Virus record (IMG/VR): IMGVR_UViG_3300007352_000001 | Location: 177,427 to 241,426 of that record | Length of the DNA: 64,000 bases | Direction: 5' to 3' (one strand) | In this document: positions 22,449 through 56,639 of the stretch, in pieces | Position numbering within the stretch: the stretch's first letter is position 1 | Layout: each line of letters starts with the position of its first letter | Program-made: the position numbers and the translations under genes | Notes under the pieces: model-generated | What the model saw: only the letters and a program-made list of their open reading frames with translations | Told to the model about the DNA's origin: nothing | Databases searched by the model: none

Positions 22449-22851
22449 CCTGCTCGCGCTTTATCGCTACGAACAAGGCGACGATGACACCGTCCAGGCA
22501 CACAAGATCGAGACGCGTGGCCTCGACACTGACCGAGTGGGGCACCGTGCTACCGCGGACGTCGCCAACGCCAAGGTGCTCGCGTTGGCGATTCTCCACG
22601 ATCTGCTCAACGAGGATCCACAGGAGTACCCGCACACGCGTGCGACGCCCCTGGCCGAACAACTGTACGCGACGTTCTGGGGCACGCAGCTCGAACGGCT
22701 GCACGTAACGCAGGACGAGCTATGGGAGTGGGTGCGATCACAAGGCGAAGCGGGCGGGCCGTTGCGTGTCGGCGACTCGTCCGTGCCGGATGGCACGCCG
22801 TCGACCCCGCGCGCCATCGTGCGCATCACGACCGAGAAGGTGTCGCGATGA
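22405..22851 (+). CDS. hypothetical protein
   Basis: GGAGG SD. Confidence 0.6.
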   Translation: MGAKWYGTAKSAQTNLLALYRYEQGDDDTVQAHKIETRGLDTDRVGHRATADVANAKVLALAILHDLLNEDPQEYPHTRATPLAEQLYATFWGTQLERLHVTQDELWEWVRSQGEAGGPLRVGDSSVPDGTPSTPRAIVRITTEKVSR

Positions 22852-23570
22852 TCACCAGCGTCGCGAACCTCCGGTACGGCGCTACGTACGACGTCTACTG
22901 CGGGCGGGCGATGCCGGACCGCAACCTGCCAGAATCACCGTGGGCCAACCCGTTCCGCATCGGATCGGACGGCGACCGTGACGAGGTGATCCGCAAGCAT
23001 CGTGTCTGGCTCTTCGAGCACCCCCAGCTCGCCGCGCGCGTGAAGGAAGAGCTGTACGGCAAGATCCTCGGCTGCTGGTGCGCTCCGCAGCGCTGTCACT
23101 GCGACACCTATGTCGAGCTAGCTGAGGCACACGAGATCCTGATTTCTGGCGGACGCGAGTGGGTCAACGACACGATCATCCGCAAGGCGCTCGCGCGTGT
23201 TCCGGCTGGTACGATCATCATCCACGGCGGGCAGCGCGGCGCTGACACCGTCGCCGATCGCGTCGCCAAGGAACTCGGATTCGACACGATTGCGTTCCCG
23301 GCCTGGGGAGCTGGGGCTGACCAGCGACTGGCGCGGTCCGGCAAGGGTGCCGGGAATCTTCGCAACCTCCGCATGCTGCTGCGCTCCCCAAAGCGCGTGC
23401 TCGCGTTCCATGACGATCTCGAAAACCAAAGCCGCGGTACCAAGCACTGCGTCACTGCGGCGCAGTTCGCCGGCATCACCGTCGAGCTGTTCACCTCAAC
23501 CGGCGCGGAGATTTTGCTCACGCCGTTCAGTCGAGAGGAGAGTCTCAATGCGCTCGCTTCTACTCAGTAG
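22848..23570 (+). CDS. DUF4326 plus SLOG (YspA/DUF2493-like) fusion protein
   Basis: YCGR..SPWANPF...LGCWCAP..CH.D, then ILISGGR..IIHGG.RGAD..RN..M..VLAF..S.GT. Confidence 0.8.
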   Translation: MITSVANLRYGATYDVYCGRAMPDRNLPESPWANPFRIGSDGDRDEVIRKHRVWLFEHPQLAARVKEELYGKILGCWCAPQRCHCDTYVELAEAHEILISGGREWVNDTIIRKALARVPAGTIIIHGGQRGADTVADRVAKELGFDTIAFPAWGAGADQRLARSGKGAGNLRNLRMLLRSPKRVLAFHDDLENQSRGTKHCVTAAQFAGITVELFTSTGAEILLTPFSREESLNALASTQ

Positions 23571-41685: not shown

Positions 41686-42063
41686 TCAGCTCTGCGCGCC
41701 GACGATGTCCTCGGCCATCTTCGAGTAGCGGGCGTTGGAGGCCAGGAACTGCTCGCGCCACTCCCAGTCGTCCATCACGTAGCGGGCGAAGTCGTGCTGG
41801 CTCAGCTCCACGATGTCGTCGACCGACATCTCCAGCATCTTGAGCACCCGATCGTACTCTTTGGTCTGGTCGACCGGCGCCAGCATCGACCAACTGCGTG
41901 GGATCCGCCGTCCTGCCTTGGCGTTCTCCAGCAGGCGGTCCAGCTCGGCGATCGCCTGTGCCCGGAACCCCTCCTGGGCCTCCAGGAAGATCGCCCGGTG
42001 CTTCTCGCGGTTCTCGCGCACGATGGCGAGCAACGCGGCCTTCTCAATCTTGACGGTCTGCAT
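41686..42063 (-). CDS. conserved phage hypothetical protein
   Basis: GGAGGG SD; P.D...EYDR...MLEMS......L...DF..YV.D.W.W. Confidence 0.7.
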   Translation of the reverse strand: MQTVKIEKAALLAIVRENREKHRAIFLEAQEGFRAQAIAELDRLLENAKAGRRIPRSWSMLAPVDQTKEYDRVLKMLEMSVDDIVELSQHDFARYVMDDWEWREQFLASNARYSKMAEDIVGAQS

Positions 42064-42291
42064 GGCCCCTCCCACGTCCTAGACTGGGACGTCCTAGTAG
42101 CTGGCTAGTAGGTGCGGCTGGGCACATACCGGGGGCAGGGTGGCGTGCGCGACAGCGCCGCCGCCCGTCAGCTGACTGCTGTGCGTGACTCACCACACCC
42201 ACCCGCATTGACCCACCCATGCCGTTGATTTGGAGCGCACGCTCTTAGCGCGCTTCTTACTCGCTCGTCAAGCTCAACGTCCAAACAGCCG

Positions 42292-42442: not shown

Positions 42443-42928
42443 ATGCGTCGAGTCGATCCGCTGGAAGTGGACGTGCTCCTCGACCTCGCCGCTGCTGCAG
42501 GTCCTGGTGCCGCCACCCAGCTCGCTTCAGGCCGTTCGCTGTTCGATGTCAGCGAACGCGCTCAGTTCCTCGTGTCCTCGCAGGCTCTGGCCGAGGCTCT
42601 CGCCGATGTGCAGCCGCTCGTCGACGCGATGCCGCGCCACAGTGAAGGCGATCTGGACACGGCCATCGACCTGCAGGATGCCGCCGCGCAGCTGGGCAAG
42701 GTCATCCCGCGGTTGCAGCTCGCGATCCGTGCCACCGAGAGCATGCAGGAGCGTGCGGCGATCGTCGCCGTCCTCGACGCCGCGCTCGACGCACACCGCC
42801 AGCTGAACGAGTGGTCGAGCCGTGCGGCCGAGTACAACCCGCCGCACGCCGCCGAGATCATCCAGAACTTCCACGGCCTGGTCATGATGGCGAAGGACCT
42901 GGCCCAGCTGGACCAGAACTACCGGTGA
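42443..42928 (+). CDS. helical hypothetical protein
   Basis: GGAGGG SD. Confidence 0.7.
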   Translation: MRRVDPLEVDVLLDLAAAAGPGAATQLASGRSLFDVSERAQFLVSSQALAEALADVQPLVDAMPRHSEGDLDTAIDLQDAAAQLGKVIPRLQLAIRATESMQERAAIVAVLDAALDAHRQLNEWSSRAAEYNPPHAAEIIQNFHGLVMMAKDLAQLDQNYR

Positions 42929-43515
42929 GCACCATCCGCGCCCTGGTGTGCGCCGCAGCCTTGCTGCTGAGCGCACCGGCCTGGGCAGGGGAAATCTACC
43001 TGCACGCCGCGGGCGCCCTCACCAAGGGCTCTGGTGGATGCACACGGGTGCAGAACGACGGCACCGCCGGCCCGATCGTCTCGATGCAGTGCTCGCAGAC
43101 GGGCACGCAGGAGCTGTTCTGGTGGGTGCCGATCCCGTCGGACTTCGGCAGTACGATCACGCCGACGATCACCTACCACACCGGCTCGGTGTCGGCTGGC
43201 AACCTGTGCTTCCGGATCCGGCTGACGGCGTTCGCCACCGACGGCTCGGCAGCCAACATGCTGACGGCCGCGGCAGCCACCAACACGGTGACGATCACCG
43301 ATGCCAACCTGACCGCGGTGGTGAACTCGCCGAACCAAGGGGCGGGTACCTCGCTGACGCCGCAACAGCGCACCAGCGCAGGGCTCACCAGCTGCGCGGT
43401 GCAGAGCTGCCAGAACCTCTACGGCCTGGTGCAGGTCGAGCGCATGAACGACGGCAGCTGCAGCTCGAACCTCGCGACCAATGCGCAGGTCGACATGCTG
43501 CGGCTTGCCTACTGA
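42925..43515 (+). CDS. secreted Cys-rich beta protein, paralog 1
   Basis: signal peptide AWA/GEIY; CT...C...PIPSD...Y...C; ends MLRLAY. Confidence 0.75.
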   Translation: MSTIRALVCAAALLLSAPAWAGEIYLHAAGALTKGSGGCTRVQNDGTAGPIVSMQCSQTGTQELFWWVPIPSDFGSTITPTITYHTGSVSAGNLCFRIRLTAFATDGSAANMLTAAAATNTVTITDANLTAVVNSPNQGAGTSLTPQQRTSAGLTSCAVQSCQNLYGLVQVERMNDGSCSSNLATNAQVDMLRLAY

Positions 43516-43524
43516 CGAAAGGCG

Positions 43525-44109
43525 ATGCGGATGGATGCGGAGCGGTTGCTGCTGAAGGTCCGGAAGTTCGGTGACGTTCAGGCGGAACATGTGGCCTGGA
43601 CCGAGCCGTTGTCGTGGAACTCGGCGACTCCGGCCGGTGTTGGGTTCACCGAGCACAAGCTGTCGTTCATCGACGTGCTCAACCACGCCTTCCAGCTCTA
43701 CGCGCAGGGCGACGTGGTCCCCGACGTTGGGGATGAGCTGGTTGATGTCAGCCGCAAGGTCGCGAGCCGCGACCTCGTCTTCCTCGGCGAGCGCGCCACG
43801 TTCATCATCGAGACGCTGCCGGGGTTCATCATGCACCCGCCGCAGCAGCTCGGCAGTGCGACGCGCCTCGGCCGTCTGAACGGACACTGGACGGTGGTGC
43901 GGGAGTCCGCGTTGCCGCTGAACGAGTTCATCGTGGTGCACGTGCAGCCGCAGACGCGCACGGTGTTCGCCACGCCAGGCGTGGCCGGTAAGCAAGAAGA
44001 CATCGCGGAGTTTCTCCAGCGCCGCGCCGCCTCGCTGATCCAAGCGGTGGCCTCGACCAAGGCGCCGGCCAATCGACAGGTCAATCCCCACGCATCGTGC
44101 GCTGGGTGA
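43525..44109 (+). CDS. hypothetical protein
   Basis: 194 aa ORF interrupting the paralog array. Confidence 0.65.
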   Translation: MRMDAERLLLKVRKFGDVQAEHVAWTEPLSWNSATPAGVGFTEHKLSFIDVLNHAFQLYAQGDVVPDVGDELVDVSRKVASRDLVFLGERATFIIETLPGFIMHPPQQLGSATRLGRLNGHWTVVRESALPLNEFIVVHVQPQTRTVFATPGVAGKQEDIAEFLQRRAASLIQAVASTKAPANRQVNPHASCAG

Positions 44110-44118
44110 CGAGGTCTC

Positions 44119-44706
44119 ATGGGCGGGTGGCGGTGGTGGAGTGGAGTGGTTGTGGCCGTGGCACTGGGTGCTGCGGCGCCCGCCCATGCAGGCAAACTCG
44201 AACTGTGGGCTGACTCGGCCTACACGCTCTCGGGCTCGGGCTGCACGAAGGTCGTGAACAACGCCGCCTCGAACGAGGCGTACACGACCATCAACTGCCC
44301 GGATGCCGCGGGCGGGACCTTCGTGGTTCCGTTCGCGATCCCGGAAGTGGCCGCGGCCACGGGCTGGACCTACCGCATCCACTACGCGGTCTCGAACAAC
44401 TCGACCTCGTCGACGTGCGCCTGGGACGTGCAGCTCCAAGCGCAGACGAGCGACGGGACAGTGGTGATCACTGGCGGGCCGACGACCACGGTCACCGCGG
44501 GGCCGCGCGATCACACCGCCGGCAAGATCGACCTCTCGCCGACCAGCGCGGCGATGACCGGCATTCGCGACAGCCAAGCCGGCGCGAACTGCTCGGGATC
44601 CACCTGCACGGACACCGGGGGCGTCGCACTCGTCACGCTGAACAACACCAGCACGAGCGGCATCACCGGCACCTGCAACTTTCGGCTGTTGGAGATCACG
44701 TACTGA
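44119..44706 (+). CDS. secreted Cys-rich beta protein, paralog 2
   Basis: AHA/GKLE; CTK..TINC..GW...CAW..NCS..C..CNFRLLEITY. Confidence 0.8.
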   Translation: MGGWRWWSGVVVAVALGAAAPAHAGKLELWADSAYTLSGSGCTKVVNNAASNEAYTTINCPDAAGGTFVVPFAIPEVAAATGWTYRIHYAVSNNSTSSTCAWDVQLQAQTSDGTVVITGGPTTTVTAGPRDHTAGKIDLSPTSAAMTGIRDSQAGANCSGSTCTDTGGVALVTLNNTSTSGITGTCNFRLLEITY

Positions 44707-45290
44707 TGCGCTCACTGCTCACCACGCTGTGCTTCGCTGTGCTCGTGCTGGCTCAGCCGGCGTGGGCAGGACGGCTCTATCTCTTTGCCGAGAACGCCAT
44801 CCTGCCGTCGGGCTCGACGTGCACCAAGAACATCGAGATCCAGTCGGATCGCGCCTACACGACGATCAACTGCCCGCCGGGCGGCAACAACATCTTCGCG
44901 ATCCCGTTCCCGTTCCCAACCGATGCGCCGAGCACGGGATGGACGTTCCGCGTCCACTACCAGGTGAACCAGACCACCGCGTCGTCGCGCTGCGCGTGGG
45001 ACGTCACCATGAAGACGTTCCCCGACAACAGTGACGCCACGATCACCGGCGGCTCGGTCACCACGCTCCAGAGCACCTCGCAGACGCACACCGTCAACCG
45101 CCGGTACGTCTCCCCGGCGAGCGGCGCCATCAGCCAGATCCTCGGTCCGAGCGGCAGTCCCTGCACCGGCACGCCGTCGAACTGCGCGGATCTCAGCGCG
45201 GTGGCGAAGCTCGACATGAACGACGGATCGAGCACCAACATCAGCAACCCGAACAGCTGCAACTTCCGCATGCTGGAGGTTCGGTACTGA
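44706..45290 (+). CDS. secreted Cys-rich beta protein, paralog 3
   Basis: TGATG coupling; AWA/GRLY; ends CNFRMLEVRY. Confidence 0.8.
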   Translation: MRSLLTTLCFAVLVLAQPAWAGRLYLFAENAILPSGSTCTKNIEIQSDRAYTTINCPPGGNNIFAIPFPFPTDAPSTGWTFRVHYQVNQTTASSRCAWDVTMKTFPDNSDATITGGSVTTLQSTSQTHTVNRRYVSPASGAISQILGPSGSPCTGTPSNCADLSAVAKLDMNDGSSTNISNPNSCNFRMLEVRY

Positions 45291-45937
45291 TGCCGCGTTC
45301 GCTGTTTGCGAATAGCAAACGTGCCGGCGTCACGGGCCTTTTCTCCCTGTTGGGGTGTGCCCGTTTGCGGATTGCATACGCCGCGGCGCTGCTCGTGCTG
45401 GTCGCCACGCCGGCTCACGCCGGCCGCATCTACGTGTTCGCCGAGGCGTTCTACCTGACGACGACTTCGACGTGCACCAAGACGGTCAACTCGACCACGC
45501 AGAACTCGACGACGACGATCAACTGTCCGTCGAACGTGCTGACCACCGGCTTCCGCGCCAACGTGGCGTTCCCGCCCGATGCGCCGAACAGCTGGTCGTA
45601 CAGGGTCTGGTACACGACGCCGGACACGGCCTCGAACAAGTCGTGCAGCTGGCAGATCCAGGCGCGCTCGCGCCCCCACGACTCGCGCAACGACCTGGGC
45701 GGCGGTGAGGACACCGCTACCGTGATCGGTGGACCGATCCAACACGCCAACAACCGCCAGTACAAGACCGACATCTCGACGGCGACGGCCGTCTACAACA
45801 CGGCGACTTCGGCCAACTGTTCGAGCACGGCGTGCCAGGACACCGAGGTGCGCCTCAACATCGCGCTCATTCCGGTGCTCTTCAGTGCCGACTCCGCGAG
45901 CGAGTGCGACTTCCGATATCTGGAGATCGAGTACTGA
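45290..45937 (+). CDS. secreted Cys-rich beta protein, paralog 4
   Basis: AHA/GRIY; ends CDFRYLEIEY. Confidence 0.8.
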   Translation: MPRSLFANSKRAGVTGLFSLLGCARLRIAYAAALLVLVATPAHAGRIYVFAEAFYLTTTSTCTKTVNSTTQNSTTTINCPSNVLTTGFRANVAFPPDAPNSWSYRVWYTTPDTASNKSCSWQIQARSRPHDSRNDLGGGEDTATVIGGPIQHANNRQYKTDISTATAVYNTATSANCSSTACQDTEVRLNIALIPVLFSADSASECDFRYLEIEY

Positions 45938-46521
45938 TGCGCACGCTACGGATTCTCTTCGTCGCGCTCGCTGTACTCCTCGTGGGCTCCAAGGCTCACG
46001 CCGGCCGCATCTACGGCTGGGCTGAGGCAGCGAAGCTCACCTCATCGTCCTCGGGTTGCACGCTCACCGACAACCAGGGTGTGCGCTCGGGCGGCAACTA
46101 CGCCTACCGCACGATGAACTGCACCGACGGTGCGAACCGCGAGTTCGTGCTGCCGTTGTGGATCCCGCCCGATGCGCCCAACACGGGCTGGACGGCGCGC
46201 GTGCATTACGAGACGACCGACACCAGCGCCAGCAAGGTCTGCGCGTGGAACGTGTCGATTGGCGCCTACAAGGACGGCGCCTCGCCGCTCGGCTCGCAAG
46301 GGTCGACCACGGCGATCGCTGGTAGCTCGCGCACGCACGTGGCTGGCACGCGCTACATCACCAGCCCGTCGGCGACCTTCTCGCTCTACGATGTGCTCGC
46401 GGCTGGCGCCTGCGCCTCGACCAACTGCCTGCAGAAGACGGCCAAGGCCTACGTCACGCTCGACAGCTCGGCCACCACCGCCACGGGGTGTGACTTCCGC
46501 ATGCTGGAGGTTCGGTACTGA
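45937..46521 (+). CDS. secreted Cys-rich beta protein, paralog 5
   Basis: AHA/GRIY; ends CDFRMLEVRY. Confidence 0.8.
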   Translation: MRTLRILFVALAVLLVGSKAHAGRIYGWAEAAKLTSSSSGCTLTDNQGVRSGGNYAYRTMNCTDGANREFVLPLWIPPDAPNTGWTARVHYETTDTSASKVCAWNVSIGAYKDGASPLGSQGSTTAIAGSSRTHVAGTRYITSPSATFSLYDVLAAGACASTNCLQKTAKAYVTLDSSATTATGCDFRMLEVRY

Positions 46522-47126
46522 TGCGCACGCTGAAGCTCCTGGTCGTGCTCGCGCTGTGCCTCCTGCCAGCCACCGCGCACGCCGTCACCTACTTCGCCTT
46601 CGCCGAAGACGCCACCCTCGCCACGGCGACTGACATCTGCGCCATCACTGAGCACCAGGGCACGTCGAGCAACTACACTACGGTCGACTGCACGGGCTCG
46701 GGCGAGACGCGTGTCGCCATCCCGCTCTACCGCCCGGTGTACGACCCGAGCAGCTGGCCGAAGGCGGCGACGGTGAAGGTCCACTACGAGACGCCCGACA
46801 CCAGCTCGAACACGCACTGCGACTGGGACGTGGCGATCTACATCATCAACACGTACACCTCGTCGGGCACGGTGCAGCCGGCCCTGGTGAATGCGTCTTC
46901 GGTGTCGACGACGGCCGTCACGGGCACAACCCAGACGCACGCGGCGGACACGCGCTACATCACGCCCGCCACCTCGACGTTCAACTTGAAGGATCCAGCT
47001 GGCTCGGACTGCAGCAACGGCAATGCGGGCTGCGCCGATGGCGAGGCCGTGGTCATCATCGACTGGGACGACGCGTCGTCGACCGCGAGCGAGTGCCGGC
47101 TGCGGGCGGTGGAGGTGAACTACTGA
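46521..47126 (+). CDS. secreted Cys-rich beta protein, paralog 6
   Basis: AHA/VTYF; ends CRLRAVEVNY. Confidence 0.8.
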   Translation: MRTLKLLVVLALCLLPATAHAVTYFAFAEDATLATATDICAITEHQGTSSNYTTVDCTGSGETRVAIPLYRPVYDPSSWPKAATVKVHYETPDTSSNTHCDWDVAIYIINTYTSSGTVQPALVNASSVSTTAVTGTTQTHAADTRYITPATSTFNLKDPAGSDCSNGNAGCADGEAVVIIDWDDASSTASECRLRAVEVNY

Positions 47127-47800
47127 TGCGCTCGCACATCGCTGAGCTGCGGTTGTTCGTGAAGCAGCTGCATGAGCTGGGCCGTCTGCTCGGGATCCCG
47201 AAGCAGGCGATGCGCCAGTACATCGGCAGCCGCCTGTTCGTCGTGGCACTGGTCGCGCTCCTGGGTGGCTTCGGTGAAGCGCACGCTGGCATGATCCAGC
47301 TTGGCGCCGAGGCCGCACAGTTCGCGAGCCCCGCGCCTGCCACGTGCACCAAGGTCACGACCGCGGCAAGCAACTACACCGACACCTCGATTAACTGCAC
47401 GTCGTCTGGATCAGACGTGAAGTTCTACCTGCCGGTGGCGATCCCACCAGATTACACCGGCGGCTCGGGCATCTTCACCTCGGTGTACTACACGTCGCCT
47501 GACCCGTTCACGAACCGGCGGTGCTACTGGGCCTTGGCGCTCTCGGCCCTGCGCGACGGTGCCACCGCCGCCTCGCTCGATACCACGACGGTGTTCACGG
47601 CCGGCCCGCAGGTTCAGCACGTGGCGGGTCGACGGTACTGGGCGCAGAACAACGTGCTCCCGTACGACGTGCTAGCCGGCGCGAACTGCTCGGGCAGCAA
47701 CTGCTCGGATACTGAGGCCATTTTGGAGGTCACGTTGCGCGCCTCGCCGAACACCTCGGCGACGCAGTGCAACTTCGACTTCGTCACCCTTCGCTACTGA
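47126..47800 (+). CDS. secreted Cys-rich beta protein, paralog 7
   Basis: AHA/GMIQ; ends CNFDFVTLRY. Confidence 0.8.
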   Translation: MRSHIAELRLFVKQLHELGRLLGIPKQAMRQYIGSRLFVVALVALLGGFGEAHAGMIQLGAEAAQFASPAPATCTKVTTAASNYTDTSINCTSSGSDVKFYLPVAIPPDYTGGSGIFTSVYYTSPDPFTNRRCYWALALSALRDGATAASLDTTTVFTAGPQVQHVAGRRYWAQNNVLPYDVLAGANCSGSNCSDTEAILEVTLRASPNTSATQCNFDFVTLRY

Positions 47801-47816
47801 GAAAGGGACGTACGCC

Positions 47817-48266
47817 ATGTGGAAGGTTCTGGTGCAGGTTGTGGCTGGGGCAGCGATGCCCTTCATTTTGCTGGGGGCGACACTGGCGTATGTGCCGCCT
47901 CAGTACGTGATCGGCTCTGCCGCGCCACCGGAGTGCAAGGCGTGCAGCTGCCCCGGCGACCTGGACGGCAACGGTGCAGTGTCGGTAGGCGAGCTGATCG
48001 CGGCGGTGAACTCGCTGCTGCACGGTTGCCCAGCGCCGGCCCCGACGTTCACGCCGATCACCAAGCGCACCGCGGTCGTCTTCTGCCCAGGGGACTGCAA
48101 CGGAGATGGAGTGGTGACCATCGCAGAGAAGGACCAGGCGATCGCGATCATCAACGGGGCGCCCCTCTCGACGTGCATGGCCGCGGACGCCAACGGCGAC
48201 GGCCGTGTGCGCAGCAACGACATCACCATGATCATCCAGGCGATCAACGACGGCTGCCCGCAATGA
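47817..48266 (+). CDS. secreted or membrane protein with dockerin-like Ca-binding repeats
   Basis: CPGDLDGNGAVSVGELIAAVN, CPGDCNGDGVVTIAE, ADANGDGRVRSNDI..IIQA. Confidence 0.75.
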   Translation: MWKVLVQVVAGAAMPFILLGATLAYVPPQYVIGSAAPPECKACSCPGDLDGNGAVSVGELIAAVNSLLHGCPAPAPTFTPITKRTAVVFCPGDCNGDGVVTIAEKDQAIAIINGAPLSTCMAADANGDGRVRSNDITMIIQAINDGCPQ

Positions 48267-48700
48267 GCACATTGTCGGCTGAGTTCCGCATGTTCCCGCC
48301 GACCTACGCGGACATGTACGGGTTCCCGCGGCAGCCGCCCAGCTCGGGCTGGCAGCAGTGGCAGCAGCAACAATGGGTCGACGACCGCACCTCGGTGCAG
48401 CCGCCGTACGTGCCGTCGTACGGGGAACCCATCTGGATCGTGCAGCCGTCGGTCACGGTGCCGATGGTGCCGTACCCGCATCCGCAGAAGCTGCCGACGG
48501 TGCCGTCACCAACGCCGTTCCAGCCACAGCGGACCTACACCGTCGAGGAGCTGGAACTGATGCTGGCTGCGGCGCAGCAGCACGCTCTGCACGACGGCGC
48601 CCCGAGCGATCACGTCCCCACGCCTTTCGAGCACTTGCAGAAGGGGCAGATCGGCTACGCCTCGCGTCGCGACGTCGTCGAGCGCGACGGCGCACCGTGA
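48263..48700 (+). CDS. Pro/Gln-rich protein with HLQxGQxGYASR motif
   Basis: ATGA coupling; FEHLQKGQIGYASR. Confidence 0.6.
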   Translation: MSTLSAEFRMFPPTYADMYGFPRQPPSSGWQQWQQQQWVDDRTSVQPPYVPSYGEPIWIVQPSVTVPMVPYPHPQKLPTVPSPTPFQPQRTYTVEELELMLAAAQQHALHDGAPSDHVPTPFEHLQKGQIGYASRRDVVERDGAP

Positions 48701-48870
48701 GGATTCAGGGCCGGCTCCGTACCCCGAAGCCCGTCGTCTTCCACGATGAGGAGTGCACGGTGCGGTTCAACGAGCACCTGCAACCTGGCCAGGTCGGCTA
48801 CGCGTCACGTGAGGGAACACATGGCTGGACCGCTGCTCGATCCGACTCGCCCGCACCACCCGTCGCTTGA
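48697..48870 (+). CDS. small protein with HLQxGQxGYASR motif
   Basis: GTGA coupling; FNEHLQPGQVGYASR. Confidence 0.55.
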   Translation: MRIQGRLRTPKPVVFHDEECTVRFNEHLQPGQVGYASREGTHGWTAARSDSPAPPVA

Positions 48871-49177
48871 CGACCTAGTCGATCCGAACTGTCACCGCCT
48901 GGTTCGCCACTTCTTCGAGAAGCCGCGGACACCTAGCGCCGACGGCGTCGCCTTCGATCGTGACGGCAAGCGCCCGTTCAACTTCCACCTGCAGCGCGGG
49001 CAGGTGGGCTACGCCAGTCGCACCGTCGTCGACACGGCGATCGGCACGGTGGCGGTGAGTACGCCGGAGTGCGGGACCGTGCCGCAGCTGGTCACCAACG
49101 GACCGCCGCTCACGAACAACCCACTGCTCGACATCGCCAACCGGCGCATCCGTGCACTGACACACCGTGAGGAGTGA
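48821..49177 (+). CDS. hypothetical protein with HLQxGQxGYASR motif
   Basis: GAGGG SD; FNFHLQRGQVGYASR. Confidence 0.6.
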   Translation: MAGPLLDPTRPHHPSLDDLVDPNCHRLVRHFFEKPRTPSADGVAFDRDGKRPFNFHLQRGQVGYASRTVVDTAIGTVAVSTPECGTVPQLVTNGPPLTNNPLLDIANRRIRALTHREE

Positions 49178-55892: not shown

Positions 55893-55966
55893 GCCCCGAT
55901 GGCTCAGTCTGGTAGAGCGGCTGACTTTGGATCAGCAGGTCGCTGGTTCAAATCCAGCTCGGGGTG
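55893..55966 (+). tRNA. tRNA-Gln(UUG)
   Basis: cloverleaf; anticodon arm GCTGA-CTTTGGA-TCAGC; T loop TTCAAAT; G1-U72, G73; no encoded CCA. Confidence 0.85.
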
Positions 55967-55969
55967 CTT

Positions 55970-56042
55970 GGGTCGATAGCTCAAATGGGAGAGCGCCTGT
56001 TTTGCAAGCAGGGGGTTTGGGGTTCAAGTCCCCGTCGATCCA
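55970..56042 (+). tRNA. tRNA-Ala(UGC)
   Basis: CCTGT-TTTGCAA-GCAGG; G3-U70 and A73 Ala identity elements. Confidence 0.9.
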
Positions 56043-56050
56043 CTTCTCGA

Positions 56051-56123
56051 TCCCCGGTAGCTCAGATGGAAGAGCGCTCGCCTACGAAGCGACAGGTCGC
56101 TGGTTCGACTCCAGTCCGGGGAA
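56051..56123 (+). tRNA. tRNA-Arg(ACG)
   Basis: TCGC-CTACGAA-GCGA; TCCCCGG/CCGGGGA acceptor; T loop TTCGACT. Confidence 0.85.
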
Positions 56124-56138
56124 CTGCACACACGATGG

Positions 56139-56213
56139 TCCCCGGTAGCTCAGCCTGGCTAGAGCATGCGCCCGATAAGCGCAGAGTCGTCGGTTCAAAT
56201 CCGACTCGGGGAA
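56139..56213 (+). tRNA. tRNA-Ile(GAU), atypical C33
   Basis: TGCGC-CCGATAA-GCGCA; T loop TTCAAAT. Confidence 0.8.
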
Positions 56214-56217
56214 CTGA

Positions 56218-56304
56218 TGCGGAGTACCCGAGTTGGTAGCAGGGAGCGGCCTGTTAAGCCGTTGGGCGTAAGCCCCGTCGTAGGTTCGAGTCCTACCTCC
56301 GCAG
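56218..56304 (+). tRNA. tRNA-Asn(GUU) with long variable arm
   Basis: TGCGGAG/CTCCGCA acceptor, G73; GCGGC-CTGTTAA-GCCGT; V-arm GGGC-GTAA-GCCC; T loop TTCGAGT. Confidence 0.8.
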
Positions 56305-56639
56305 CCTTTTCTCCTCCTCTGCTTTTCGTAGCTCCTGCACGCGCTTCCACAGGTGCGGGAAGCGCTGCTGTAGGTCAGGTGAGCGTTCGAGGTCCTGGAT
56401 GGCCTCGCGCACGAGGGGCGCGAGCCAGTCGCGGTCTTCAGTCATCATCATCTCCTGAGACCAGTATCTCACGAAGGTTTCCACCGCCGACCCACCAGGC
56501 TGTGGGCACGGTTACGGCGGCGTCTCTGTGCAAGAGGCGCCGCTAGATCTCTCGCTCGTCCACCAGGTGTGGAAGGAGCATCCGGTGGCGTCGTCCGAGC
56601 TATGCTTGGCGGCGCTTCCAGTCAACGTCTGGAGGACGT

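What the first reader, a model, noticed from the sequence alone, without database searches (positions are those of the whole stretch)
47817..48266. Dockerin-like protein closing the secreted array: possible anchor and host clue
Seen: hydrophobic N-terminus, then CPGDLDGNGAVSVGELIAAVN, a PT linker, CPGDCNGDGVVTIAE and ADANGDGRVRSNDI. Known: DxDxNG/DxNxDG loops are dockerin/EF-hand Ca-binding repeats. From recollection, not a search, this Cys-flanked CPGDCNGDG..V...EL..AVN variant is abundant in Candidatus Binatia (deltaproteobacteria-related), and delta-group bacteria use sigma54 heavily. Inference: a host-derived module that may dock phage exoproteins on a host surface scaffold, and a hint that the host is Binatia-like.
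Basis: partly seen in the sequence, partly recalled or inferred. Interest (0 to 1): 0.6.

Follow-up and report, generated by a model that had tools for sequence, protein, structure and literature searches.

The report
Phage mini-dockerin beside secreted lectin-like array
A 241-kb phage encodes a small exported protein built from one and a half calcium-binding dockerin modules of a four-cysteine type that is hugely expanded in Binatia bacteria, so it is probably a docking piece for the host cell surface and a useful but unproven clue to the host.

Summary
Window 47817-48266 (+) is a real 149-aa gene. It has a hydrophobic N-terminus, one Cys-flanked calcium-binding half repeat, a Pro/Thr linker and one complete type I dockerin (Pfam PF00404, 37.7 bits against a cut-off of 22.9).

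A scan of 185,579 species returned mainly Binatia-class genomes. One Binatia genome has 69 copies of this module, against 0-2 in a planctomycete, an acidobacterium and a clostridial genome. These bacteria also carry cohesins on lipoprotein scaffoldins. The phage has none.

New findings:
- The window belongs to a complete 241-kb myophage.
- That phage also encodes a secreted 1129-aa protein with three such dockerins.
- The "array" is a family of secreted beta-sandwich proteins with a CBM6/35/36-like fold.
- Members of this family sit next to a small exported dockerin or half-dockerin gene in at least four phage lineages.

The binding partner (host cohesin or the array proteins) is not settled. 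The one co-fold gave no verdict. I found no independent host link from CRISPR spacers, prophages or tRNAs.

Verdict: a new variant of a known kind, of moderate interest. A Binatia-like host is plausible (about 0.6) but rests essentially on this one module.

The parts
47801..47808 (+). RBS-like GAAAGGGA, 8 nt before the ATG of the dockerin gene and directly after the stop of array gene A6
   Evidence: sequence reading
47817..48266 (+). gene for the 149-aa dockerin-like protein (P0001)
47817..47891 (+). aa 1-25: one Lys, then a 22-residue hydrophobic stretch ending in TLA|Y. Either a Sec signal peptide or an uncleaved N-terminal membrane anchor (not resolved)
   Evidence: sequence reading. Conserved in orthologue P0002. 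AF2 pLDDT about 41-46 here
47940..48032 (+). aa 42-72: a single Cys-flanked F-hand (half dockerin) with Ca ligands D-D-N-E at loop positions 1, 3, 5 and 12. It aligns to the second half of the Binatia-type module
   Evidence: EF-hand_1 25.7 bits. 31.2 bits against a profile built from bacterial modules only, profile positions 31-60. 78-84% DNA identity to Binatia-class genomes over 63-90 nt
48033..48083 (+). aa 73-89: Pro/Thr-rich linker
   Evidence: sequence reading. 94% conserved in P0002
48084..48260 (+). aa 90-148: a complete type I dockerin module with four conserved Cys and two Ca loops (DCNGDGVVTIAE, DANGDGRVRSND)
   Evidence: Pfam PF00404 37.7 bits. AF2 pLDDT 94-97. Best Foldseek matches are solved dockerins, TM 0.62-0.72, rmsd 2.4-2.8 A. 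66.6 bits against the bacterial-only profile. 77% identical to dockerin 1 of the phage's 1129-aa protein
42925..43515 (+). A0: seventh member of the secreted beta-sandwich family, separated from A1 by a 194-aa non-secreted ORF (43525-44109)
   Evidence: E 1.4e-41
44119..44706 (+). A1: secreted array paralogue (signal peptide, 6 conserved Cys)
44706..45290 (+). A2: array paralogue, the one that was modelled. Fold is a CBM6/35/36-like beta jelly roll
45290..45937 (+). A3: array paralogue
45937..46521 (+). A4: array paralogue
46521..47126 (+). A5: array paralogue, with an orthologue in L087
47126..47800 (+). A6: last array paralogue, with an orthologue in L087. All junctions from A1 to A6 are TGATG overlaps
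48263..48700 (+). downstream ORF joined by an ATGA overlap. It has no signal peptide and the same arrangement is conserved in L087

Best explanation
The ORF is a real, conserved gene of a 241-kb myophage. It encodes a small exported protein with four parts: an N-terminal signal or anchor segment, one single Cys-flanked Ca-binding F-hand (a half dockerin), a Pro/Thr linker, and one complete type I dockerin of the four-cysteine subtype. That subtype is present in some 50-70 copies per genome in Binatia-class bacteria. The protein carries no enzyme or cargo domain.

Most likely it is a calcium-dependent docking piece that acts in the envelope of a Binatia-like host. After Sec export and disulfide formation, its dockerin would plug into cohesin modules, which such bacteria carry on lipoprotein scaffoldins and which the phage lacks. 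There it would either hold the co-encoded lectin-like beta-sandwich exoproteins (the array family) at the cell surface or occupy host cohesin sites. The plausible effect is surface remodelling or receptor masking during infection.

Shown: the gene, the domain, the subtype, its taxonomic concentration, the presence of host cohesins, and the repeated neighbourhood with the array family. Inferred: export topology, the binding partner and the biological effect.
For: Domain:
- Pfam Dockerin_1 over the cut-off, covering the whole profile.
- A confident AF2 model of aa 90-149 whose best structural matches are solved dockerins.
- Ca ligands intact in all three loops (sequence).

Subtype and distribution:
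- A species-wide scan returned 80 loci. Of these, 53 lie in genomes labelled Candidatus Binatia or shown to share that class, and the 9 from other phyla rank 59th or lower with partial matches.
- 69 and 54 matches in two Binatia-class genomes, against 1, 0 and 2 in a planctomycete, a Thermoanaerobaculia and a clostridial genome.
- A profile built from 34 bacterial modules alone scores the phage module at 66.6 bits and the half repeat at 31.2 bits.
- DNA-level identity of 78-84% between the half repeat and Binatia-class genomes.

Possible partner:
- Cohesin PF00963 scores over the cut-off in 4 of 5 Binatia-class genomes.
- One example is a lipoprotein with a PT linker and two cohesins, followed by a gene of signal peptide-dockerin-PT linker design.
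- The phage has no cohesin.

Functional link with the array:
- Genes of the array family lie next to a small exported dockerin or half-dockerin gene at two loci of this phage, in L087, in L091, in L092/L093 and in L104.

Export:
- Hydrophobic N-terminus, 8 Cys in the exported part, and neighbours with classic signal peptides.
Against: - No binding was shown. The single co-fold (Binatia cohesin with the phage dockerin) scored 0.01, which is no verdict.
- Protein identity to any bacterial module is only 38-51%, so the donor and any specific cohesin are unknown.
- The array proteins have neither dockerin nor cohesin, so a simple scaffold model does not explain how they would be tethered.
- Two other loci of the array family in this genome have no dockerin next to them.
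- The host is not independently identified.
- Whether the N-terminus is cleaved or stays as an anchor could not be decided.
Confidence: 0.4

Rival explanations
1. The dockerin and half-dockerin bind the phage's own array proteins. The beta-sandwich family would then play the part of a cohesin, giving a self-contained phage complex in which P0001 is the membrane anchor or connector.
For: The two gene kinds are neighbours in at least four phage lineages, including one (L104) whose dockerin is of a different, non-Cys subtype, and at two loci of this genome. Cohesins are also beta jelly rolls. In L092 and L091 the neighbour is only a signal or anchor segment plus a single F-hand, which looks like a dedicated small partner.
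Against: The model of the array protein matches CBM6/35/36 modules, Cry domain III and Eph ligand-binding domains (Z 8-11). No cohesin appears among the 50 best entries, and there is no Pfam cohesin match in the phage. The phage F-hands stay close to the Binatia consensus rather than forming a type of their own, which fits mimicry of host dockerins better.
Confidence: 0.25
2. The module has no specific protein partner. It would be a Ca-binding, disulfide-stapled stabilising or solubility element of exported proteins, as may be true of many non-cellulosomal dockerin-like modules, and P0001 would be a small periplasmic Ca-binding protein.
For: Binatia-class genomes hold many more dockerin matches (13-34 to the Pfam model, 54-69 to the subtype profile) than cohesin matches (2-9). 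Sequence-only comparison with solved structures finds EF-hand Ca sensors first.
Against: The fold and the Pfam match are dockerin rather than paired EF-hand. Cohesins and dockerins occur in the same proteins and operons in these genomes. The conserved pairing with the array family suggests a specific role.
Confidence: 0.15
3. It is a lysis or membrane protein of the holin or spanin kind: an N-terminal transmembrane segment with a periplasmic tail.
For: A weak Pfam match to a mycobacteriophage holin family (E 0.0057, 17.3 bits). In L092 and L104 the equivalent gene cluster lies close to endolysin-like genes (GH19, Peptidase_M15).
Against: The match is far under the cut-off of 27.8 bits and there is only one hydrophobic segment. 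The rest of the protein is dockerin. No endolysin lies nearby in the window.
Confidence: 0.05
4. On the host clue: the module was picked up by horizontal transfer and does not mark the present host, which lies outside Binatia.
For: Identity to Binatia modules is at most 51%, and weaker relatives occur in Planctomycetota and Acidobacteriota. No close capsid or array-family relatives were found in about 300 genomes of the phylum. No spacer-like match was found, and tRNAs are only 75-85% identical.
Against: The subtype is rare outside the class. The phage GC (65.1%) equals that of Binatia-labelled loci (64.5%), with tetranucleotide correlation 0.88 against 0.80-0.81 for Planctomycetes and Acidobacteriota loci, although sample sizes are unequal. 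The signal peptide-dockerin-PT linker design of the phage's 1129-aa protein copies that of Binatia proteins. One phage-like contig binned in a Binatia-class genome shares two accessory genes at 48% and 36% identity.
Confidence: 0.35

Closest known systems
Type I dockerin modules of cellulosomal enzymes (Pfam PF00404; for example Clostridium cellulolyticum 2vn5, C. acetobutylicum 6kgf, C. thermocellum 3ul4)
   Same: Two F-hand repeats of about 22 residues, each with a Ca loop followed by a helix. The Pfam score is over the cut-off. The model superposes on solved dockerins at 2.4-2.8 A over 54-58 residues.
   Different: Four conserved cysteines staple the module. It is not attached to an enzyme. 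It is preceded by an extra single F-hand. It is encoded by a phage, and its cohesin partner is unknown.
Non-cellulosomal cohesin/dockerin modules of Binatia-class bacteria (seen here; the wider spread of such modules outside cellulosomes is from my own knowledge of the literature)
   Same: The same four-Cys subtype (66.6 bits against a bacterial-only profile), the same PT linkers and the same signal peptide-dockerin-linker design.
   Different: The full module has diverged (38-51% identity). Its helix residues after the loops differ from the bacterial consensus (AEKDQAI and SNDITMI against DELITAV and DELVAAV). It is a stand-alone mini-protein rather than an appendage of a large protein.
Double-dockerin module of C. 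thermocellum Clo1313_0689 (8x39)
   Same: More than one dockerin unit in a row. It is the top Foldseek row for the whole model.
   Different: The match is weak (TM 0.33, E 0.05). P0001 has one and a half units joined by a flexible linker.
Receptor-masking exclusion lipoproteins of phages (T5 Llp, phi80 Cor). This is a comparison of how it might work, from my own knowledge, not of membership.
   Same: Small exported phage proteins, often encoded beside tail or receptor-binding genes, that act on the host surface during infection.
   Different: No sequence or fold relation, and no lipobox. The exclusion role is a conjecture here.
CBM6/CBM35/CBM36 carbohydrate-binding modules (for the neighbouring array family)
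   Same: Beta jelly-roll fold, Z 10-11 over about 120 residues.
   Different: No sequence similarity to any Pfam family. They are stand-alone secreted proteins with three likely disulfides. No sugar-binding residues were identified.

Membership tests
Dockerin type I (Pfam PF00404) | Score over the curated Pfam cut-off across the whole model | tested here: met
   37.7 bits against 22.9, profile positions 1-57, aa 91-144
Dockerin type I (Pfam PF00404) | Two tandem F-hand repeats, each with Ca ligands at loop positions 1, 3, 5 and 12 followed by a helix | tested here: met
   Loops at aa 93-104 (D, N, D, E) and aa 124-135 (D, N, D, D), read. Helices at 102-112 and 133-145 with pLDDT 94-97
Dockerin type I (Pfam PF00404) | Three-dimensional fold like solved dockerins | tested here: met
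   The best Foldseek rows are dockerins (6kgf_D, 2vn5_B, 3ul4_B) with TM by target 0.62-0.72, rmsd 2.4-3.2 A and probability 0.98-1.0. E-values are only 0.05-0.5 because the domain is small and the rest of the model is disordered
Dockerin type I (Pfam PF00404) | Binds a cohesin module | tested here: inconclusive
   No cohesin in the phage. Cohesins are present in Binatia-class genomes. The co-fold with one of them gave no verdict
Dockerin type I (Pfam PF00404) | Usual context: appended to an enzyme or other cargo domain | tested here: not met
   P0001 has only a signal or anchor segment, a half repeat, a linker and a dockerin. The phage's 1129-aa paralogous protein does have a long C-terminal part
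Four-cysteine dockerin subtype of Binatia-class bacteria (informal) | Cys before PGD, Cys at loop position 2, Cys in the inter-repeat linker and Cys at the C-terminal G-C | tested here: met
   C90, C94, C120 and C147 align with the conserved columns of 34 bacterial modules
Four-cysteine dockerin subtype of Binatia-class bacteria (informal) | Recognised by a profile built without any phage sequence | tested here: met
   66.6 bits for aa 90-148 and 31.2 bits for aa 39-72
EF-hand (PF00036) | Score over the cut-off; EF-hands normally occur as a helix-loop-helix pair | tested here: inconclusive
   25.7 against 25.4 bits on the half repeat only. No entering helix is visible, and the unit stands alone
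Phage holin (PF16081) | Score over the cut-off; two transmembrane segments | tested here: not met
   17.3 against 27.8 bits. Only one hydrophobic segment
Cohesin (PF00963), considered for the array proteins | Pfam match or a cohesin-like fold | tested here: not met
   No match in the phage at E up to 1. The fold search gives CBM6/35/36, Cry domain III and Eph LBD, and no cohesin among the top 50 entries

The most novel reading that the evidence does not exclude
Phages of Binatia-like bacteria carry a conserved exoprotein system. Tandem arrays of secreted lectin-like beta-sandwich proteins would be organised on the infected cell's envelope by a phage-made mini-dockerin that imitates the host's own dockerins and plugs into host cohesin scaffoldins. 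This would be a viral take-over of a non-cellulosomal cohesin-dockerin surface display system, for example to mask receptors. It would also give the first functional handle on that display system, and on phage-host biology, in an uncultured class.
Probability: 0.2. Interest if true: 0.75.

Novelty: new variant of a known kind. Interest (0 to 1): 0.55.

Why it matters
Dockerin-cohesin pairs are known mainly from cellulosomes. Their role in the many bacteria that have them without cellulosomes is an open question. This work points to three things:
- An uncultured bacterial class carries some 50-70 copies per genome of a disulfide-stapled dockerin, together with cohesin lipoproteins.
- A complete jumbo phage has taken up the same module, both as a stand-alone mini-protein and in triplicate on a large secreted protein.
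- Several phage lineages keep such a mini-dockerin beside a previously undescribed family of secreted beta-sandwich proteins.

If the phage module binds host cohesins, it gives a testable case of a virus using its host's surface-assembly code. It would also provide small, well-defined reagents (60-residue modules) for finding the partners, and a sequence marker that may help assign phages to Binatia. None of the 50,697 deposited phage genomes searched has a relative of either protein.

Tried and rejected
- Co-fold of a Binatia cohesin (L100, first cohesin) with the P0001 dockerin: score 0.01, no verdict. It counts neither for nor against binding. The quota was then spent, so the pair of array protein with dockerin could not be tried.
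- IMG/VR scan with P0001: no relative other than the phage itself.
- PHROGs: no family for P0001, the array proteins or their neighbours.
- Deposited phage genomes: no match for P0001 or an array protein.
- Host links:
  - The major capsid protein is at most 38% identical to cultured phages of unrelated hosts and has only weak partial matches in 301 genomes of the phylum.
  - The array family was not found in 301 genomes.
  - A 20-kb DNA search against 301 Binatia-class genomes gave only tRNA matches (75-85%), dockerin matches and one 291-bp match. Nothing looked like a spacer.
  - The gene behind the 291-bp match has a homologue in 1 of 301 genomes, on a phage-like contig. That is too rare for a test against other phyla.
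- Tetranucleotide and GC comparison is compatible with Binatia but barely discriminating.
- Sigma54: no activator gene over the cut-off. The strict TGGCAC-N5-TTGC motif is not enriched, and a looser motif is mildly enriched but absent near the array.
- Literature: no paper in the held library contains both "dockerin" and "Binatia", and two broader searches gave nothing relevant.
- Cohesin-like nature of the array proteins: rejected on fold.
- Promoter and terminator scan of 42.8-50.2 kb: nothing beyond chance.

Full report
**1. The observation**

The ORF at window 47817-48266 (+) is present and encodes 149 residues.
- a hydrophobic N-terminus (aa 1-25);
- CPGDLDGNGAVSVGELIAAVN (aa 45-65);
- a Pro/Thr linker (aa 72-89);
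- CPGDCNGDGVVTIAE (aa 90-104);
- ADANGDGRVRSNDI (aa 123-136).

Pfam Dockerin_1 (PF00404) matches its whole profile at aa 91-144 (E 2.4e-9, 37.7 bits, cut-off 22.9). EF-hand_1 reaches 25.7 bits on the first, single repeat.

The gene is real:
- GC3 is 0.85, as in the phage's other genes.
- An RBS-like GAAAGGGA lies 8 nt upstream.
- A 149-aa orthologue at 80% identity sits in the same gene order on an independent contig, L087. It differs by 47 synonymous against 30 non-synonymous codons.

**2. Where it lies**

The window is the last 64 kb of a 241,426-bp virus record with direct terminal repeats, rated complete. The record is a myophage. It has a gp23-type major head protein, a prohead protease, a tail sheath, a baseplate J protein and an SLT/YQBQ tail protein.

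The gene closes a run of exported proteins. Six tandem paralogues, A1-A6 (44119-47800), are joined by TGATG overlaps. Each has a classic signal peptide and six conserved cysteines, and they are 26-40% identical to one another. A seventh member, A0 (about 42925-43515), lies upstream beyond one non-secreted ORF.

**3. Anatomy of the protein**

- aa 1-25: one Lys, then 22 hydrophobic residues ending in TLA|Y. This is long for a signal peptide and short of proof for an anchor. I could not decide between them.
- aa 42-72: one Cys-flanked F-hand with intact Ca ligands.
- aa 73-89: the linker.
- aa 90-148: a complete dockerin with both Ca loops intact and four cysteines.

With an alignment of 46 modules, AlphaFold2 models aa 90-149 at pLDDT 94-97 with the two expected helices. 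The half repeat is modelled at 65-70 and the N-terminus is not modelled. Foldseek's best rows are solved dockerins (6kgf_D, 2vn5_B, 3ul4_B; TM by target 0.62-0.72, rmsd 2.4-3.2 A, probability at least 0.98). The E-values are weak (0.05-0.5), as expected for a 60-residue domain in a partly disordered model. Sequence-only comparison with solved structures finds EF-hand loops first. That reflects the shared Ca loop and not the fold.

**4. The Binatia claim**

A pattern-plus-tblastn scan of one genome from each of 185,579 species gave 86 relatives, of which the best 80 were kept.
- 17 loci are in MAGs labelled Candidatus Binatia.
- 36 more are in MAGs with other labels ("delta proteobacterium", "bacterium", one "Myxococcales"). 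Their genomes appear in the sample of "class of G306", where G306 is a Binatia-labelled MAG.
- 18 are in MAGs whose class I did not verify.
- 9 are from Planctomycetota, Acidobacteriota or Clostridiales. These rank 59th or lower and match only in part.

Copy numbers point the same way:
- Five of the Binatia-class genomes hold 13-34 Pfam-level dockerins each.
- With the subtype profile, a Binatia MAG has 69 matches and a second genome of the class has 54, at E up to 1e-6.
- A planctomycete has 1, a Thermoanaerobaculia genome 0 and a rumen clostridial genome 2.

The search profile contained three metagenomic proteins of the same type, which biases it. I therefore built a profile from 34 bacterial modules only. 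It scores the phage's full module at 66.6 bits, its half repeat at 31.2 bits, and the three modules of the phage's large protein at 48-59 bits. The four cysteines are conserved columns. At DNA level the half repeat is 78-84% identical to Binatia-class genomes over 63-90 nt. Protein identity of the full module to any bacterial copy is only 38-51%, so no close donor is known. No paper in the held library mentions both dockerin and Binatia.

**5. A possible partner exists in such hosts and not in the phage**

Cohesin (PF00963) scores over its cut-off in 4 of 5 Binatia-class genomes, with 2-9 matches each and often in the same ORF as a dockerin.

One example, in L100, is a protein with a lipoprotein-type signal (LLLASC), a PT linker and two cohesins (50.9 bits). 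It is followed by a gene of the design signal peptide-dockerin-PT linker-Cys-rich domain. Another, in L101, has cohesin, PT linker, dockerin and Kelch repeats in one chain. The phage has no cohesin at E up to 1.

My one co-fold, of the first L100 cohesin with the P0001 dockerin, scored 0.01. That is no verdict and no evidence either way.

**6. A second dockerin protein in the same phage**

At genome 73673-77062, outside the window, lies a 1129-aa protein. It has a signal peptide, three tandem four-Cys dockerins (the first 77% identical to P0001's), PT linkers and a long C-terminal part with only sub-threshold Pfam matches.

It sits in a run of signal-peptide and PT-linker proteins (genome 72.2-85.2 kb) between the SLT/YQBQ tail protein and baseplate J. 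The two genes directly upstream of it belong to the array family. Proteins with Sec signals are unlikely to be virion parts, so I read this run as exoproteins, with some doubt.

**7. The array family**

These proteins have no Pfam or PHROG family. An AlphaFold2 model of A2 (pLDDT 78, pTM 0.76) is a beta jelly roll. Its best matches are CBM36, CBM35 and CBM6 modules (Z 10-11, about 120 residues aligned), then Cry toxin domain III and Eph ligand-binding domains. No cohesin appears among the 50 best entries.

An exhaustive profile search found 91 representatives. Nearly all are 180-240 aa, and the ten I read are stand-alone proteins with a signal peptide and the cysteines. The exceptions are a few distant hits that form the C-terminal domain of tail-fibre-like proteins.

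On longer contigs they lie in myophage tail regions or beside lysis genes. The phage has five further members outside the array: two at 25.7-26.9 kb, one at 151.1 kb, and the two upstream of the triple-dockerin gene.

**8. A repeated neighbourhood**

This is the most informative new result. Besides the two loci of this phage and L087, three other contig groups show the pairing:
- L092/L093 (GC 69%): an array-family gene is followed, with an overlapping stop and start, by a 56-aa ORF. That ORF consists of a hydrophobic N-terminus and one Cys-flanked F-hand (30.5 bits).
- L091 (with the same start visible in L089): the array is followed by a small ORF with a signal peptide, a PT linker and one F-hand (28 bits).
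- L104 (GC 59%): a 364-aa membrane protein with a canonical, non-Cys Dockerin_1 (40.7 bits) directly precedes two array-family genes.

The partial ORF after the array in L088 begins the same way, with a signal peptide and a PT linker.

So at least four lineages keep a small exported dockerin or half-dockerin beside this family. The pairing is not obligatory, because two loci in this genome lack it.

**9. How it most likely works**

I commit to a docking role in the host envelope. The steps would be export by Sec, folding with disulfides and Ca2+, then binding through the dockerin.

Two partners are possible. I favour host cohesins (0.4) for four reasons:
- That is what dockerins are known to bind.
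- The candidate hosts have cohesins and the phage does not.
- The phage F-hands remain close to the host consensus.
- The dockerin subtype changes between phage lineages while the array family stays, as expected if each phage copies its own host's code.

The rival, that the array proteins are themselves the partner (0.25), is fed by the conserved synteny and remains untested. A partner-less Ca-binding role (0.15) and a lysis role (0.05) are less likely. The downstream effect (tethering lectin-like exoproteins, or blocking cohesin sites, perhaps for exclusion of other phages) is conjecture. The comparison with Llp and Cor is only an analogy from my own knowledge.

**10. The host clue**

A Binatia-like host is plausible; I put it near 0.6. 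It rests on the module itself and on soft evidence:
- GC is 65.1% against 64.5% for Binatia-labelled loci.
- Tetranucleotide correlation is 0.88 against 0.80-0.81 for Planctomycetes and Acidobacteriota loci, with unequal sample sizes.
- Protein design is shared.
- One phage-like contig in a Binatia-class MAG shares two accessory genes at 48% and 36% identity.

Independent tests found nothing: capsid, array family, and spacer-like or near-identical tRNA matches for 20 kb. These negatives are weak, because MAGs are incomplete and only a sample was searched. The sigma54 argument is not supported.

**11. Novelty**

The domain is known, and its expansion in Binatia is confirmed here. New, as far as the tools show, are the following:
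- a phage-borne stand-alone mini-dockerin;
- a phage protein with three such modules;
- a recurrent pairing with an undescribed secreted CBM-like family.

Neither protein has a relative in 50,697 deposited phage genomes. I rate it a new variant of a known kind.

**12. Limits**

- No sequence here was taken for human, and no reads tool was used.
- No alternative genetic code was invoked.
- The gene calls outside the window come from my own GC3-based caller and are approximate.

Noticed in passing
window 48263-49177: Three small ORFs just downstream of the dockerin gene each carry the motif HLQxGQ[VI]GYASR. They have no signal peptide and no Pfam or PHROG family. The first overlaps the dockerin stop (ATGA), and the same arrangement is conserved in L087.
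   Followed up: partly
window 42925-47800; also genome 25.7-26.9 kb, 72.26-73.66 kb and 151.1 kb (outside the window): A family of 12 secreted paralogues of about 190 aa (signal peptide, six Cys) with a CBM6/35/36-like jelly-roll fold. There are 91 representatives in metagenomes and none in deposited phage genomes. Distant relatives form the C-terminal domain of tail-fibre-like proteins.
   Followed up: yes
genome 72.2-85.2 kb (L005, L006; outside the window): A run of signal-peptide and PT-linker proteins sits inside the tail gene region. It includes a 1129-aa protein with three four-Cys dockerins and a 1657-aa protein with a LamG-like motif. Sec signals are odd for a tail module.
   Followed up: partly
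window 55893-56306: A cluster of five tRNA genes (Gln-TTG, Ala-TGC, Arg-ACG, Ile-GAT, Asn-GTT). The Gln, Ala and Arg genes gave the DNA matches, at 75-85% identity to Binatia-class genomes.
   Followed up: partly
window 4875(-), 5579, 18044, 19784, 27169, 31228: A sigma54-like -24/-12 motif, TGGCAC-N5-YYGC, occurs 6 times against 1.66 expected (1 of 100 shuffles reaches 6). Most sites lie just upstream of + strand genes, and none is near the array. The phage has no Sigma54_activat gene over the cut-off.
   Followed up: partly
window 41686-42075 (-) and 22722-23570 (+); L106 9824-11014: Two unrelated phage accessory genes have adjacent homologues (48% and 36% aa identity; 69% DNA identity over 291 bp). 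They lie on a phage-like 48.7-kb contig binned in a Binatia-class genome, next to a 2340-aa protein and a lysozyme/M23-like protein.
   Followed up: partly
genome 98192-100453 (L006 15192-17450; outside the window): A 753-aa fusion of a GT4 glycosyltransferase with a GT9 (heptosyltransferase-like) domain lies close to the baseplate genes.
   Followed up: no
L100 1063-3006 (-), L101 1-2340 (-): Binatia-class bacteria encode lipoprotein scaffoldins with two cohesins, and single chains that hold cohesin, dockerin and Kelch repeats. This points to a sizeable non-cellulosomal cohesin-dockerin system in that class, for which I found no paper in the held library.
   Followed up: partly
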